A DNA stretch of 62,450 nt, filler included, from Sluysia triapertura (Eukaryota): the NCBI GenBank assembly GCA_046118255.1. It is 4 parts of 4 records of this genome, joined end to end, with 100 filler letters (N's around TTAATTAATTAA, not from the genome) between each part and the next. Parts side by side here need not be neighbours in the genome. Positions count along the whole stretch, not along the records: positions 13,722 to 34,173 come from JBJNIA010019961.1; 3 more parts are not named here. One strand, given 5' to 3'. This document shows, in pieces, positions 18,801 to 26,500 of the stretch. Position numbers and translations under genes: made by a program. The notes beneath the pieces were generated by a model. The model saw nothing but the letters and a program-made list of their open reading frames with translations, searched no databases and was not told where the DNA came from. The first letter of the stretch is position 1. Every line of letters starts with the position of its first letter.

Positions 18801-20322
18801 AATAGCTACTGGATTGTCAACTAGAAAAAGCAACAATTCAACGTGAAGATTATCGAGATACTGATCATGAAATAAGAATAGATCATCGTAATCATTGCTT
18901 AATCATCTAAGTGAATTTTTTAATGAGAGTCATAATTTATGCTTCTTACAATTTTTATCGTGTTGATTCATTCAAATTAATCGTCGTTTTTGCCCTTTTT
19001 TACAGTAAATCTAAACTATAATAAAGTAATTCAAATTTTACATCTAGGAGAGGGGAAAATGAATTTTCTATAAATGACAATGAATTTAATTTTGTTTTAT
19101 GAGACTCAAATTTGGATGGGAGTGGAATAAACTTTGCCCGATTCTTACAATCTGGTATTCATTTGCAAGTAAATCTAAGCCAAAACCCAGGGCTAATTTT
19201 GATCTTTTTAAGCTTAAGATCAAACTTAATTAAAATTACAGTAATTAAATCAATTATATTTAATATATTAATGATTAGAAAAAGATTCTTTTGTGTTGCA
19301 CATTCATGTATTGATGAAGTTTATGTTTTTGCACACTGTCAAGTAATTCTAAATTACATCAAGTACATCCTCACTACTATATTAAGAGAATGAAATACAA
19401 TAACAATTACTTCATATTCTCCTTATGAAAGCATTAAGTAATATGTTCGAGGCACATTCAAATTCAATAATTCCCAATACCGTTATTTTTGAAAACATTC
19501 GCTCGCTGCATAAATCTTTAACTACACAAAAATGACAATAATTATTAACTATCTACTTCATTTTTACTCCTGATCGATCCAGGTAATCCGACAAATGTTT
19601 TGGTAAATTCTCATGTTTAGTTATTTCATTTAAATTTTTAAAATCTAAACAAAAATTTATTGATTTAATACTGCAATTAAAGGTGTGGACTGATTTACTA
19701 ATCATTTCGTACACTGGAAACTCAAGGATTGGTTAGTGGTTTACTTTAAGATACTTAAAGATAAATTTGTTTATAAACTTCAAAAAGCTTCAATTAGTTT
19801 TCTAACATTTACTATTAAAAATATTAAAATTGTTAAATTCTATAATATTTAGAAACTTGAAACTCATCCTTAATTTGTTCAGTTTTGATTATCATTTCGA
19901 ATACAAATCGTGAATAAAAATATTTAAAAACTACCTTTTATATCTCAAAACTAAGAATTAATGTTTAACCATCTAAGCATGGGTCACATCAAGAAGTGTT
20001 TTTGCATAACTTTCGCGAGAGTCGAATAGTATCGATAAGCGTTCTGATGAATTTACTTGTTTTAATAGCCGAATAAAGCTTGTTGTCATTGCTGTTTGTT
20101 TACGTTAGCGCTTGGCTACATCATTTGTATACAGTATGATAGGATATTGTAAACTTGTTTGTATCACGTCCTAAATTATTATTTTGGGGTATTATGATAA
20201 TTTTTAAATTTAATTAATTTTATTAAATTAATAAATTTATAATATTTGTTTTAAAAAGATTAAAATAACGAACTATAAATATATTACAAAACTAGTTATA
20301 GAAAAATTGAAAAATTGTTTTA

Positions 20323-21290
20323 TTAAATGAAATAGTTTGTGTCTGAGTATGCCGCGTGCCACACATCACTTAGATTTCTAAAAACAAATATAAACGCACA
20401 AACCTCATCATTATAAGTTATGATTCGAAATATGAAAATATAATTTACTTTAAAATAATTTTTGTTGTCAAAGTATTTCTGTGTTGACAATTTAATTTCG
20501 GACTGACCACTTTTTGCACTGACTCCAGAATTTGGTACTAAATCATATAATCCGTGTGCATAGAGACAAAGTTTTCCATACTTTATGCATTGGCCTGTTA
20601 TTGTAGTCTCATACATGCACAATGCGGATTTCATATAACGTGATTTATCGTCGTCTTGTTTTTTATTAAACTTTATTGCGTGCTTATCATCACTTATCAC
20701 AATACCTGATTTTGAATGAGCATCAGTAGCCGATAAAACTTGATTATTACTAATTAGTCCAATAGAAGTATTAGGCGTTTGAATTAAAGTTGAAATTGAA
20801 TGGCCAGTTCGTGCTACGTTTAGAACAACACCGTGAGCGATATTTGAACTAGAAGAATCAGGTAAGACCGCTGCGTTGCTAATATCAGTATTAGTTATTG
20901 GTAACGAACTACGTTGGCATAAAGAATATTGTAGTTGTTGTTCCATTAAGCGGCATTTATTTTCTAATTAAACATTTTTATTTCTTTTACTTAACTCATC
21001 TAGATATTCGACAGCTTTTAGTAACATAATTGGAGGGGATACTTCATTATTTCTCAAAGTTGGAATACCCTCACATGATTCTGTAAAACTACTTTTCTTT
21101 ATCTTTCTAATTGATTAAAGTAATTCTTTCTCAATCCACTATCACCTGATAAATCATCAAGCATATTTGACCCTGAATACGTATGAGTTTGAAGATGATC
21201 GTCATCGTCATAGTAATCTTCATAATCATAATCGTCATTATCATACTCGTAGTCAAAAGTGTTTGAATCTTTATATTTCTTGTTAGACAT
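20323..21290 (-). pseudogene. Max-like bHLH-Zip followed by a TIS11-type CCCH zinc finger (disrupted)
   Basis: Acidic N-terminus, then RKNYFNQLER*RK / SFTESCEGIPTLRNNEVS / IMLLKAVEYLDELSKRNK / LENKCRLMEQQL, colinear with the Max bHLHZ. The last frame continues open into RYMKSALCMYETTITGQCIKYGKLCLYAHGLYDL (CCCH). Confidence 0.7.
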
Positions 21291-22455
21291 TAAGAATATC
21301 AAAACTTGTTTATAATCTAATTTTAGTTTAAAATTCTAAAAATCTTTGACTGAAAGGATTGTATATAATTTTTAAAATGTTTTTCTCATCAAACTAAATA
21401 ATTGAGTTTTAATTAAATTAGTTGCGTAACTATGCTCAGAATAGTGCAATTGGATGGCCAATAACAGAGACTATTGAAAAATACTTAACACAAGTACAAT
21501 ATATAAAACTAATTAGTGTAAATTCTAAACACCAATTAAATTTGATTTAATCACTTTACATGAATGTGCCCACAAAGCAAAACAATTGTAATTATGACAG
21601 AAATTATGAAGAAAACTGTCAATCAATGAATTGATATAATTTAAATGCTGTCCAAAATGACAGCTAAAATAATTATATACTTAATTAAATCGAATGTTGC
21701 TAGTGATAATGCAAAACGATATTGATAAGGAGAATAATGTGGATAATAATTAATAATAATTGTAGTGTTTCAACCACGCACTATAATCACATCGTCTGTC
21801 TCATACATAAATTCACACAACTCATAATTCAAGCCTACACAATCACATATAAAATATTTTCTACATATCACCACTTCAACTTACGCAATACAAAAATCCT
21901 ACACTAAAATATATTTAAATTATTAACAGTTAAATTTGCCAGAAATTATATTACACCACATGAAAGTCACACATTATTAATTCATTGTAAAACTCCAAGC
22001 CACAAAATCTGGTAATAAAATCAAGCTAACTTGATTAAATTATATTTAAATACGTAAATATTATGCCATTTGTTGTATCAGTCCTCATAATCGCCATTAC
22101 GAGCTATCTTCTTTTATTTATTTATGTATCGATTTCAAGTACAGAGCCACAGAGATTCCGGGCTCAATGTGTTAAATGATCAACTTTTTCGTAAAATTAC
22201 GTTTTTTGTCAAAAAAATGTTTCTTATATTAAAAGTAAGTTTTAATTAAAATTTACCTATTAATTAAAAATTATATTTTAATTAAAAATTATATTTTAAT
22301 TAAAATTTTGTTTTAATTTCCGCATTAATTTCTTTTATTATAATTATAATTTCAATTTCATTTTTAATTTTAACATTAATTTTAATTTTAAAATTGTATT
22401 TTATATTTCAATTTTTATTTTTATATTTTTTTATATTCCAAAAAAATACTATATA

Positions 22456-23518
22456 ATGATTTTCTGCAATTTTCTAAAAAATATATTCGGATTATTGCTC
22501 AGATGATGTATATTCACGATAAAAATTATTGAGACTTTAATTTCAAATATTATGAGTTTTCTTATGCAATGTTAAACAGATTCAGAATAGATCAAACACT
22601 GTTATAGATCAAACAATTTTCAGCAATAACGTCGTTAAAGATGAAACACTTCTAGAATTAACGTTGACAGAGATGAAACATTTATTTGCGATTATGTTTT
22701 TACAGACGAAACTTTTCTCACATTGGAATCCGTGAAGGGTTCTACACTAATTCAAAATATTTTTAGAAACATTAGTAATTTTGAAAATTGTTCTCAACTA
22801 GTTAGACTAATGTTTTGTAAAACTGTTCATTACATTTGTTATACTTTAAATAATCAAGTTATACGCAGCACATTGTTTAATGACTTAAGACATTGTGTTA
22901 ATTTAAAATATTATTATGAACGTTCTCAAAGTGTATTATTTACTGAATTTCCTTGTTTATTTTTCGAAAGATTCAAATAAATAGTTATATAGTTAAATGT
23001 TTAAAATCCGTTGCACATTTGACGACTATTATGAGTCATCCGACACTAAGTATATCGACTGCACCGTCTTTGAACAATAAAACACAAAGACTACTTAAAA
23101 TTTGAATTCACGTGAATTAATCGCTAAAAGAGTATATACATATGAAGTGTTGAAAGAAAAGACTTGTATATTTATGCAACAAACTTTTCAACGGTTAATG
23201 ACGTCAGTTAGAGGATACTATATGATTATGTTTTATTTAGAATCTTTTAAGTTATCATGCTTTAGCATAGACGCGTCATATAATATCGATGAGTTTGTAA
23301 CTAACTTATTTATGAGACAAGTAGATCGCTCAGAGAATATGTGGCATGTTGCGCGAGACGTTCCTGATTTTCGAGACATGACTTTTCAAATTGAACGTGG
23401 TCCTTTATATTATCAAATGGACATTGTTTGTTATTTTATCTATAATTTTCTTTCTGTTGCTGTTATTTTTGTAATTCGCATAATATATGGAGAGTTTTTA
23501 TATTATCAAGGACATTAA
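22456..23518 (+). pseudogene. Broken coding-like region, unknown family, with a C-terminal hydrophobic segment
   Basis: Consecutive same-strand ORFs (22723-22980, 23102-23518) in a less AT-rich island flanked by very AT-rich DNA; no motif recognised. Confidence 0.4.
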
Positions 23519-26500
23519 GTCCACCTTTATAAAGATAAATATTTTAATACTTTTTTAAATTTAATAATGTTTGTTGTAAATTAATGTATCGTATAATAAT
23601 TTATGAAGTATTAAACAATAAACCATTAAACATAATAACATTAAAAATGTCTTACAAGATCTTTTCCAAACATATCATTTTTTATCCAAACTTATTTTAC
23701 AAAACATATTTTAATTAATTCAATTATCATTTTTATAATTTAAAATATATTTTAAGTTTTTTATATCTAAAAATATCGTGCATAAAAGACAATGTCTGGT
23801 TATCAACATTCTTATCTGTTTATTACAATTATTATCATTAGCATTATTATTATTATTATTATCACTAATTACATTATTACATATTATTATCAATTTTATT
23901 TATTTCTATAATTATTTTTATTATTAGTTTTAATATTTTTTATTATTAATTATAATTAATAGTTTTTATTATTAATTTCATAATTTCCATGAATTTTTAT
24001 CATCATCATTATTATTTATTTATTTAATTTTTAAATTACTATTAAATTGCAATATTAATTTAATTTTAGATCCAGACTTTACAGATTATTTTATCTTAGA
24101 TTCAAAAAGTAATACGAATAGGTTTAAATCAAATATTATTATATATCCTGACTCTTAAGAACCTTAAGGCGTTCATTGATGCATCTGACTGTAATTAAAG
24201 AATTAGGTATATTTTAATAAAAATTATATTCAGATTTTGTTGCATTTTAAACGAATACAATGAGGTTTTAAAGTTCGACTCTAAGTCTAGTCATGAAATT
24301 TTAATAATTAAATCCTATAGTTTAATTTGAAAATAATTTATATTGAAATTGAGTTTATAATTCATGAAATTAATATTTTTCGAGTTTAAGGTTGCTAGTT
24401 ACATCAATTTAATTTTAAACTAATTTAATTTAATTTTAAATTCAACTAACATGCTTTATATTTCGTCGAGTCAATTACAACATTAAATTATGTTAGTAAT
24501 TAATTAATTCTCTCGTATCGTAATCACAATGATTATCGAAATTCATTACGTCCTTCTCATTATCTAACTTTAGTCAACAATTCTTTAATTTTTAATTTTT
24601 AATCTTTAATTTTAGACACAAACTTTGTGAAATCATTGGCGTAATGAATATTAATTTTCTTTATAAACAGTCATCGACTATCGTGATTCATATAAGCAGA
24701 ATATCTTACTTGGTACAATGTGTGAATAAACAGTTTATCAAAATCTAAATAACTACTTATAACGACTACGTTTTGTCACTTAGATTTCTTGTTCTACGTA
24801 ATAATTGCTTCATATATATTCCTCTCATAAGAATACTTATTGACACTAAATTACTAGCTTATCAATTCACTAAATCTGATTGTTATATTTTCTATTTATA
24901 GAAGCTTCAATATTTCTTATCAATTTACCACATAACTTATCCTCATTAAACATTTTCATACCACAAGATAACAATACTTCAAAAAGTTCATACCGCAAAA
25001 TAGCCATCACAAAATTCATATTGAAAATGCAACTAGTGCATTATTTTTGTATTACGTTATCGTGGCTCTATGTACTTTTAGATTTAGTCAAAGTTGGAAT
25101 AGATTTGAGAATATTATTGAAAGAATAAGGTAAAATGATGGATTATGTTTGTTAATGGGATATATATGTAAAATATTTAAATAAAAATAAAAAAGGACAA
25201 TCAAATTAAATTTTGATTTTGTTATTTTCATAAGATAATGGAATTGCTTGTTGTTTTTGGATAATAAATTGGAAGTGGACGAATTTTAATTACTAAAATT
25301 GATCGGCTTATAACCGACTCAAAAGAATAAATGATTAAATAAAGTAATTACTTTTAAATTCCCATTTTTAATCTTCTAAGCAATTAATGGTATTTGTGTT
25401 AAATATCAAAATACAAATAGCCTGATAAATTACTTAAAAATTATTTTAAAGTGATAAATGTTTGTAAAATATAGCAAAGAAGATCTAGTACTATGCTAAT
25501 TAATCACATCAATCATTATCAAAATGTTGAAAACTGATTGCATTAGTTTGAGAAAGGCTTTTCGGCATAAGTGAATTCAAAGCGATTGAGTGTATTTTGA
25601 TGATGTGTCGTTTACGGATACCAAATTAATGAGAGTGTGATTAAGAAACTGATATATAAGTAATTTCAATGTTTATTGGTATTAATCAATGTGAGTTATA
25701 ACGATTATATAAAATAATAGAACAATAGAAACACGGTAGAACAATAGTGATAAAAGAAACACTAACAATGATGGTGTGTAAAGACGCATGAATAGTTGTT
25801 TGTGTTATGGTTATATTGTTATTTTGTAGAGTATATTAAGTTATTGTTAAGTATAATGTTTTTAAGAGATGATAGTTTGGGTCCTATTATTATTCGTTTG
25901 TTTTCTTAGCGTTGCAATATTAAAAGGTTATACGGTTTCAGTGACCAATCCAACATATGAAAAATAATTCAATTTTCACAAAGGTTATTCCAATTTTATT
26001 GAAAACTTTTAATAATTGATTAAATCGTCAAAAAAAAGTATCGGTTGTATTACTTCATCTGAAACGTTACTTTTAAATAATTACGGATTTGTATCAAATA
26101 TCAAAGTTGATTGTAAAAGAGTTTCACAACAAATAAATACCATATGGTTATAAGATTATGAAATATCTAAGAAAAAAGCAAAGTTCTTACTGTTTCAGAA
26201 AAATTATAGTTAATGATTTATTTTAAGCGCTTTTTAGTAGGTATTAGTTGGTGTAAATTAGTAATGTTGGGTGTAATTGTGATTTGTATGTTGTGGAATT
26301 GTGGGTATGGATTGATTTTAGTAGGTATGTAAGAGATGAATGTATGAGTGTTAGAGTGTGATGAAAAGAAAAAAATACTAGTTTTTAGTAAAATTTTAAT
26401 GGTTGTAAAGTTGGCCACCACAAAAATAACTTGAATAATTATTCTTGCCGATTAATTCAAACTAATTAATTTGTTTGTTTCCGTGGAATTAAATACCAAA

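What the first reader, a model, noticed from the sequence alone, without database searches (positions are those of the whole stretch)
20323..21290. Max-like bHLH-Zip joined to a TIS11-type CCCH RNA-binding finger
Seen: the zipper end (LENKCRLMEQQL) runs in one open frame through a Ser/Thr-rich linker into RYMKSALC...GQC..YGKLCLYAHG..DL, followed by KNYFK|gtaaat, which may begin a second finger. The bHLH part has a stop and small frameshifts. Established: Max-family proteins bind E-box DNA and ZFP36-type CCCH fingers bind AU-rich mRNA; I know of no protein combining them. Inference: a decayed copy of a lineage-specific DNA/RNA dual regulator, or a still-expressed CCCH gene that lost its bHLH.
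Basis: partly seen in the sequence, partly recalled or inferred. Interest (0 to 1): 0.72.

Follow-up and report, generated by a model that had tools for sequence, protein, structure and literature searches.

The report
Decayed mobile-element copy fusing Max and Unkempt
The "Max bHLH-zipper joined to a CCCH finger" is real sequence, but it is one broken copy of a repeat family present in hundreds of copies, built from spliced messenger RNA of the host's own Max gene joined to an Unkempt-type finger module; the copies decay neutrally, so this is not a working dual DNA/RNA regulator.

Summary
It is a decayed member of a dispersed repeat.

- **Copy number.** The own 619-Mb genome holds at least 150 scored copies of the Max part and of the linker-plus-finger part. 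Most carry stops.
- **Origin of the bHLH part.** Contig C224685 of the same genome holds the multi-exon Max gene (best solved-structure match human MAX, E 2.5e-15). The window copy and 31 of 31 aligned copies lack all four GT..AG stretches of that gene (36, 36, 95 and 42 nt). The window copy, the only one compared with exon 4, also lacks the 3-kb intron. The family therefore comes from spliced Max mRNA.
- **Origin of the finger.** It is Unkempt-type (Pfam PF25427, 44.6 bits; C-x9-C-x6-C-x3-H), not TIS11-type. It resembles a second, larger repeat family made from Unkempt fingers 1-3.
- **Shared backbone.** Both families share the 5' terminus and its roughly 170-nt module. One Unkempt-type copy also has a tail resembling the window's.
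- **No selection.** Diversity is equal at the three codon positions (0.241/0.245/0.246).
- **No second finger.** The frame after KNYFK runs into the element's 3' tail.

How the element moves is inferred, not shown; retroposition is my best guess. Interest is low to moderate.

The parts
21348..21760 (-). Upstream spacer of the repeat unit. It begins inside a (TTA)n microsatellite at 21760, where an unrelated 1.9-kb repeat abuts it. The unit's 5' module is missing from this copy.
   Evidence: Shared with copies L004, L015, L046 and L047. Sequence read. nhmmer finds no 5' module in the window.
21291..21347 (-). Stretch derived from the 5'UTR of the host Max mRNA.
   Evidence: The alignment to the Max locus C224685 starts 57 nt before the ATG.
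21130..21290 (-). Max exon 1 equivalent: ATG and acidic, Tyr-rich N-terminus. The junction at 21130|21129 lacks the gene's 36-nt intron.
20979..21129 (-). Max exon 2 equivalent (basic region, helix-loop-helix), broken. 13 nt are missing near 21100, giving a frameshift and TAA at 21101-21099.
   Evidence: 72% identity over 39 aa to own-genome Max, E 2e-18. DNA alignment. No Pfam HLH hit for the pieces.
20844..20978 (-). Zipper and following stretch (Max exon 2 end and exon 3 equivalents), with an in-frame TAA at 20970-20968. Three GT..AG stretches of the gene (36, 95 and 42 nt) are absent.
20691..20843 (-). Max exon 4 equivalent (Ser/Thr-rich linker). In the gene this exon lies 3 kb downstream of exon 3.
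   Evidence: 85.7% identity over 161 nt to C224685:2026-1866. 75% identity over 48 aa.
20644..20690 (-). Junction between the Max-derived part and the finger module. It is poorly conserved among copies.
   Evidence: Alignment of copies, the Max exon 4 end and Unkempt-derived copies.
20539..20643 (-). Single Unkempt-type CCCH zinc finger, spacing C-x9-C-x6-C-x3-H.
   Evidence: Pfam PF25427, 44.6 bits, E 1.4e-11. Best solved structure is Unkempt 5elh, E 2e-4. 71-77% DNA identity to Unkempt-derived repeat copies.
20449..20538 (-). Frame after the finger, running to KNYFK. It is a shortened relative of the post-finger stretch of the Unkempt-derived repeats.
   Evidence: tblastn alignment with L077.
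20183..20448 (-). Non-coding 3' tail of the unit. The open frame stops at TAA 20325-20323. The conserved terminal ~90 nt ends ..ATCATAATACCCCAAA at 20183.
   Evidence: Homology of many copies stops at 20179-20185 and the flanks then differ.

Best explanation
Window 21760-20183 (minus strand) is a dead, 5'-incomplete copy of a non-autonomous mobile element about 2 kb long.

A full unit has this order:
- a sharp 5' terminus (TGTGGTGGCCAAC..) and a 5' module of roughly 170 nt;
- a (TTA)n microsatellite;
- a body;
- a 3' tail ending ..ATACCCCAAA.

The body is a chimera. Its first part is the 5'UTR and exons 1-4 of the host Max gene with every intron removed, that is, copied from spliced mRNA. This is joined in frame to a module holding one Unkempt-type CCCH finger. 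Sister elements with the same 5' terminus carry Unkempt fingers 1-3 in place of Max.

Shown: the homologies, the absence of introns, the high copy number, the shared 5' terminus and module, and the neutral decay.

Inferred:
- An RNA-mediated step, such as reverse-transcriptase template switching or recombination between a Max cDNA and an older Unkempt-carrying element, created the fusion.
- The element was then spread by machinery supplied in trans, most likely that of a non-LTR retrotransposon.
- The copy in the window makes no functional protein.
For: - **High copy number.** The 988-bp stretch has at least 40 scored copies at 73-87% identity. The linker-plus-finger protein gives 156 matches. 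The Max part gives 149 matches, most with stops.
- **Real Max gene.** C224685 has intact exons, GT..AG introns and a best solved-structure match to human MAX at E 2.5e-15.
- **Window copy aligned to that gene.** It lacks the 36-nt intron exactly and breaks at each exon edge, including across the 3-kb intron.
- **Introns absent family-wide.** 31 of 31 copies lack all four GT..AG stretches, while exon columns are 80-100% filled.
- **Finger type.** Pfam zf-CCCH_UNK; Unkempt 5elh.
- **Real Unkempt gene.** It lies on C224636. A large family of intronless copies holds fingers 1-3.
- **Shared finger and tail.** The window's finger is 71-77% identical in DNA to those copies, and its tail resembles that of one copy, L077.
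- **Shared 5' end.** The Max-type and Unkempt-type elements share the 5' terminus and module at 72-79% identity. The two host genes lack it.
- **Abundant terminus.** The exact 18-nt 5' terminus occurs 381 times in the genome, against 0 for the reversed control.
- **Sharp 3' end.** Homology stops at a fixed point and the flanks then differ.
- **Neutral decay.** Codon-position diversity is 0.241/0.245/0.246 over 31 copies.
- **Fusion is ancestral.** 39 of 53 copies keep Max part and finger adjacent on one strand.
- **Finger module is older.** Max parts are 79-83% identical to the Max gene. Only 1 of 53 fingers still gives a DNA hit to the Unkempt gene, at 69%.
Against: - No autonomous partner, poly(A) tail or clear target-site duplication was found, so the mode of transposition is open.
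- Only 18 of 53 sampled copies show the 5' module. The 3' terminus is exact in only 18 places in the genome.
- A few copies keep long open frames (344, 285 and 265 codons), and the Max-finger joint is in frame. This leaves a little room for a coding role of some members.
- Contig C224685 ends 1.87 kb after Max exon 4, so a further Max exon cannot be excluded.
- No expression data could be obtained.
Confidence: 0.8

Rival explanations
1. The family is a lineage-specific, expanded family of real Max-CCCH dual DNA/RNA regulators, and the window holds one of its pseudogenes.
For: The founder joined both domains in one frame. Some copies keep long ORFs from an ATG (L014 has 344 codons). Pfam HLH exceeds its cut-off in several copies (L037).
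Against: - Diversity is equal at the three codon positions.
- Most copies carry stops or frameshifts.
- The longest ORF, in L014, has lost the second zinc ligand (Cys to Tyr).
- The units have fixed termini, and their 5' terminus and module are shared with elements carrying other host fragments.
- The word-index protein search found no relative.
Confidence: 0.06
2. The host Max gene of this animal really ends in a CCCH exon, and the family consists of plain processed pseudogenes of that normal mRNA.
For: All copies are intronless and in frame from Max exon 4 into the finger. The Max contig ends 1.87 kb after exon 4, so a further exon could lie beyond it.
Against: - No CCCH exon lies in the 1.87 kb after exon 4.
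- The finger also occurs in elements without any Max part, and one such element (L077) has a tail resembling the window's.
- Full units carry a 5' module and (TTA)n tract that are absent from the Max locus.
- The finger is far more diverged from any host exon than the Max part is.
Confidence: 0.08
3. The element is a DNA transposon of the gene-capturing kind (Helitron-like or Pack-type) that picked up retrocopies, rather than a retroposon.
For: One conserved 5' end is shared by elements with different internal host fragments. There are no LTRs. No poly(A) tail was seen.
Against: - No terminal inverted repeats.
- The ends are not the 5'-TC and CTRR-3' of Helitrons.
- The Max and Unkempt fragments are intronless.
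- Some copies are 5'-truncated although the contig continues well beyond the break.
Confidence: 0.2

Closest known systems
Processed pseudogenes and chimeric retrocopies made by LINE reverse transcriptase, including template-switch chimeras (reviewed in PMC5470649; U6-L1 chimeras in PMC4476161; both listed but not read in full)
   Same: Intronless copies of a host mRNA, including its 5'UTR. Two unrelated RNAs are joined head to tail. The copies are dispersed and decay neutrally.
   Different: Here the chimera sits between a conserved 5' module and a 3' tail and reached hundreds of copies, so it behaves as a mobile element in its own right. No poly(A) tail or target-site duplication was seen.
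Gene-fragment-carrying transposons (Pack-MULEs, Helitron captures); from my own knowledge
   Same: One backbone with conserved ends carries different host gene fragments and creates chimeric open frames.
   Different: Those elements capture genomic DNA with its introns and have inverted repeats or Helitron ends. Here the fragments are spliced, and neither kind of end is present.
MAX, bHLH-leucine-zipper partner of MYC (PDB 1NLW, 1AN2, 1HLO)
   Same: The source gene on C224685 aligns without gaps over 72 aa to human MAX, E 2.5e-15. The window copy is 72% identical to that source over the HLH.
   Different: The window copy has lost part of the basic region and carries two stops. Like the whole family, it also lacks an in-frame 36-nt stretch that codes part of the zipper.
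Unkempt CCCH fingers (Pfam PF25427; PDB 5ELH)
   Same: Same Cys/His spacing and flanking residues. The score exceeds the Pfam cut-off.
   Different: Only one finger of Unkempt's several CCCH fingers is present. The host gene's further fingers, seen on C224636, are missing. It is not the host gene.
ZFP36/TIS11 tandem zinc-finger proteins
   Same: Same CCCH superfamily, with a similar aromatic/Lys lead-in before the first Cys.
   Different: TIS11 has two fingers of C-x8-C-x5-C-x3-H spacing. Here there is one finger of C-x9-C-x6-C-x3-H, and Pfam zf-CCCH (PF00642) does not match the window copy.

Membership tests
Max-type bHLH-leucine zipper | Intact basic region (H..E..R motif), helix-loop-helix and in-register zipper | tested here: not met
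   The window copy lacks 13 nt in the basic region/helix 1 and has TAA at 21101-21099 and 20970-20968. Its pieces give no Pfam HLH hit.
Max-type bHLH-leucine zipper | Descent from a Max gene (sequence homology) | tested here: met
   72% identity over 39 aa, E 2e-18, to own-genome Max. That gene matches human MAX at E 2.5e-15. Several family copies exceed the Pfam HLH cut-off.
ZFP36/TIS11 tandem CCCH | Two fingers of C-x8-C-x5-C-x3-H spacing separated by a short linker | tested here: not met
   There is one finger, spaced C-x9-C-x6-C-x3-H. The text after KNYFK is the element's tail, not a second finger.
Unkempt-like CCCH finger (Pfam PF25427) | Score above the curated cut-off of 31.1 bits | tested here: met
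   44.6 bits, E 1.4e-11.
Unkempt protein | Full set of CCCH fingers as in the host gene | tested here: not met
   Only one finger is present. The host gene with further fingers lies on C224636.
Processed (retro)copy of an mRNA | All introns of the source gene precisely absent | tested here: met
   31 of 31 copies lack all four GT..AG stretches. The window copy also lacks the 3-kb intron.
Processed (retro)copy of an mRNA | Poly(A) tail and target-site duplication | tested here: inconclusive
   No poly(A) at the 3' end. Only short A/T-rich flank matches were seen, which mean little at 24% GC.
Mobile element with fixed termini | Sharp, conserved 5' and 3' ends with unrelated flanks in different copies | tested here: met
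   5' end. 3' end.
Helitron | 5'-TC and CTRR-3' ends with a subterminal GC-rich hairpin | tested here: not met
   The ends read TGTGGTGG.. and ..ACCCCAAA.
TIR or LTR element | Terminal inverted or long direct repeats | tested here: not met
   None found in two full-length units.
LINE-dependent retroposon | 3' tail shared with an autonomous LINE encoding reverse transcriptase | not tested
No partner was seen in the 84 loci held.

The most novel reading that the evidence does not exclude
This genome, probably that of a parasitic flatworm, holds a mobile-element backbone that repeatedly takes up spliced host mRNAs and amplifies the in-frame chimeras to hundreds or thousands of copies. The cargoes seen are Max, Unkempt fingers 1-3 and at least two further unidentified open frames. 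That would be an RNA-based counterpart of Pack-MULE or Helitron exon shuffling in an animal. A few members might still be translated as dominant-negative or neomorphic regulators.
Probability: 0.35. Interest if true: 0.6.

Novelty: new member of a known kind. Interest (0 to 1): 0.3.

Why it matters
For annotation, hundreds of loci in this genome will look like a novel bHLH-CCCH gene family. They should be masked as repeat-borne pseudogenes, and domain-fusion surveys should not count them.

Biologically, the family is a clear natural case of exon shuffling between two unrelated regulators, a DNA-binding partner of Myc and an RNA-binding finger. The shuffling happened through spliced RNA, and a mobile backbone then spread the product. 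If any member is expressed, it would be a ready-made test of what such a fusion does. Nothing here shows that one is.

Tried and rejected
- **Alternative genetic code.** A ciliate-type code (TAA/TAG read as Gln) could explain the stops. I rejected it because the frameshift remains, TGA stops are frequent in other copies, and the Max gene's exons are open in the standard code.
- **KNYFK|gtaaat as an exon end before a second finger.** Rejected. The same text continues into a conserved non-coding tail that ends 265 nt later, and it is shared with one Unkempt-type element, L077.
- **LTRs and inverted repeats.** None found.
- **5' module of this copy.** I looked for it beyond the 1.9-kb repeat. Only a 35-nt terminus at 26421 turned up, followed by unrelated sequence.
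- **Pfam on other ORFs of the piece.** Nothing.
- **Word-index protein search with the 344-codon ORF.** No relatives.
- **Exact-product look-up of the 207-codon ORF.** Not on record.
- **Rfam and tRNA scans of the piece.** Nothing.
- **Literature.** A search for such an element in flatworms found nothing relevant.

Full report
**Observation**

The gene-like text lies on the minus strand.
- An ATG at 21290 opens an acidic, Tyr-rich stretch that runs into a basic region ending ..NQLER, followed by TAA at 21101-21099.
- In another frame the text continues through helix 1, the loop and helix 2 to a second TAA at 20970-20968.
- From 20967 to 20326, 214 codons stay open. They hold the zipper end, a Ser/Thr-rich linker, one CCCH finger (20643-20539) and KNYFK followed by gtaaat.

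Pfam scores the finger at 44.6 bits (E 1.4e-11) against zf-CCCH_UNK, whose cut-off is 31.1 bits. It finds no HLH in the window's broken pieces. The finger type is not: its spacing is C-x9-C-x6-C-x3-H, and the best solved relative is Unkempt (5elh, E 2e-4).

**It is a repeat**

The piece has 24.5% GC, and the own genome has 619 Mb in 263,945 contigs.
- The 988-bp stretch has at least 40 scored copies at 73-87% identity, out of 278 candidates.
- The linker-plus-finger protein gives 156 matches, out of 3,237 candidates.
- The N-terminus plus bHLH gives 149 matches, out of 289 candidates.
- Most copies have stops.
- The flanks of the window copy belong to other repeat families.

A few copies keep long frames. 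L014:1183-2214 has 344 codons from an ATG. L037 has 265 codons with both Pfam HLH (21 bits) and the finger. Several copies exceed the Pfam HLH cut-off in a genome-wide scan.

**Source of the bHLH part**

Contig C224685 holds a multi-exon gene on its minus strand. Its parts, in order:
- an exon with the same acidic N-terminus;
- a 36-nt GT..AG intron;
- a bHLH-zipper exon;
- a 95-nt intron;
- a zipper-end exon containing a 42-nt GT..AG stretch;
- a 3-kb intron;
- a Ser/Thr-rich exon.

Its bHLH exon aligns without gaps over 72 aa to human MAX (E 2.5e-15) and scores 53.9 bits in Pfam HLH.

The window copy aligns to this locus from 57 nt before the ATG. The alignment shows:
- the first intron missing exactly;
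- the alignment stopping at a GTGAGC..GCAG stretch of 36 nt inside the zipper-coding exon;
- the alignment resuming in each following exon, including the one 3 kb away, at 84-86% identity.

In an alignment of 31 copies, none fills any of the four GT..AG stretches, while exon columns are 80-100% filled. The family therefore descends from one spliced Max mRNA.

The 36-nt in-frame stretch codes 12 residues of the zipper. By my own count, the unspliced form differs from human MAX by one heptad and so keeps the register, while the spliced form shifts it. The founder RNA may thus have been a minor isoform.

**Source of the finger**

A genome scan with PF25427 gave 150 scored hits, all above the cut-off, out of 5,489 candidates.
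- One hit is the real Unkempt gene on C224636, where introns separate its finger exons.
- Most of the others sampled are intronless copies holding Unkempt fingers 1-3 (Pfam PF18384, PF00642 and PF25427).
- These copies match the gene only within exon limits.

The window's finger is 71-77% identical in DNA to these copies. One of them, L077, has a post-finger text and tail that resemble the window's.

Within the Max family, the Max parts are 79-83% identical to the Max gene. The finger, in contrast, hits the Unkempt exon in only 1 of 53 copies, at 69%. The finger module is therefore older than the Max part. No CCCH exon lies in the 1.87 kb after Max exon 4.

**Anatomy of the unit**

- **Size.** Full units, such as L046:503-2673, are 1.9-2.2 kb.
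- **5' end.** They begin sharply at TGTGGTGGCCAAC.., followed by a module of roughly 170 nt.
- **(TTA)n tract.** It lies between the 5' module and the body.
- **Body.** The Max-plus-finger chimera described above.
- **3' end.** The tail's last ~90 nt end ..ATCATAATACCCCAAA, after which the flanks differ.
- **No terminal repeats.** There are no LTRs or inverted repeats.
- **Shared with Unkempt-type elements.** These carry the same 5' terminus and module at 72-79% identity. The two host genes lack it.
- **Abundance of the termini.** The exact 18-nt 5' terminus occurs 381 times against 0 for the control. The 3' terminus is exact 18 times against 0.
- **Other cargoes.** Further elements join the finger to other, unidentified open frames (L078/L081 and L080).
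- **This copy.** The window copy runs from 21760, inside the (TTA)n tract where a 1.9-kb repeat abuts it, to 20183. Its 5' module is missing.

**Selection**

Mean pairwise diversity over 31 copies is 0.241, 0.245 and 0.246 at codon positions 1, 2 and 3. This is neutral decay. 39 of 53 sampled copies keep Max part and finger adjacent on one strand, so the fusion is ancestral to the family. The longest open frame, in L014, has lost a zinc ligand.

**Interpretation**

Shown:
- the window holds a dead copy of a dispersed unit whose body is spliced Max mRNA joined to an Unkempt-type finger module;
- the unit's 5' terminus and module are shared with elements that carry Unkempt fingers 1-3 instead of Max;
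- the intact host Max and Unkempt genes lie on separate contigs.

Inferred:
- an RNA-level event added Max cDNA to an older Unkempt-carrying element, either template switching by a reverse transcriptase or cDNA recombination;
- the product was mobilised in trans, probably by a non-LTR retrotransposon.

Some copies are 5'-truncated although the contig continues well beyond the break. No partner element, poly(A) tail or reliable target-site duplication was found, so a DNA-transposon route remains possible.

**Organism**

Introns of 36-42 nt in an animal gene suggest a neodermatan flatworm (my own knowledge). The seven-digit contig names cited for the Protopolystoma xenopodis draft imply a comparably fragmented assembly. 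This identification is unverified, and nothing in the verdict depends on it.

- Inside one local script the two halves of Max exon 3 were concatenated, only to measure identity against loci already held.
- The reads tools could not be used.

Noticed in passing
window 21761-23648: A separate 1.9-kb dispersed repeat: 40 scored copies at 76-84% identity, 3,094 candidates. It abuts the (TTA)n tract of the Max-finger unit. Its two longest ORFs have no Pfam match.
   Followed up: partly
window 26389-26423 (minus strand): A 35-nt copy of the backbone's 5' terminus (..GTGGTGGCCAACTTTA..) followed by sequence unrelated to the Max or Unkempt units. It is probably another cargo variant of the same backbone.
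   Followed up: partly
window 19195-19475 and 19957-20170: Two further short dispersed repeat families with many genomic copies at 73-81% identity. The whole piece looks like a mosaic of repeats with no ordinary gene.
   Followed up: no
G000:C224685 (L072), about 5740-1866, minus strand: The real Max gene. It has GT..AG introns of 36 and 95 nt and in-frame GT..AG stretches of 36 and 42 nt inside coding exons. The 36-nt stretch codes part of the zipper, and its removal would shift the heptad register.
   Followed up: partly
G000:C224636 (L073) and loci L074-L084: The real Unkempt gene, plus a very large family of intronless copies of its fingers 1-3 (5,489 first-look candidates for the finger) carried on the same backbone.
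   Followed up: partly
L080 (G000:C204542) 2599-2063 and 1223-429, minus strand: A finger module is fused to a different 265-codon frame. Further upstream on the same strand lies a 179-codon frame with a Cys/His motif that reminded me of the C-terminus of LINE ORF2. Pfam gives no significant match and the tail differs.
   Followed up: partly
L078 and L081 (G000:C207379, C186611): A third kind of unit, in which an unidentified 100-190-codon frame is joined in frame to the end of Unkempt finger 2 and to finger 3.
   Followed up: no
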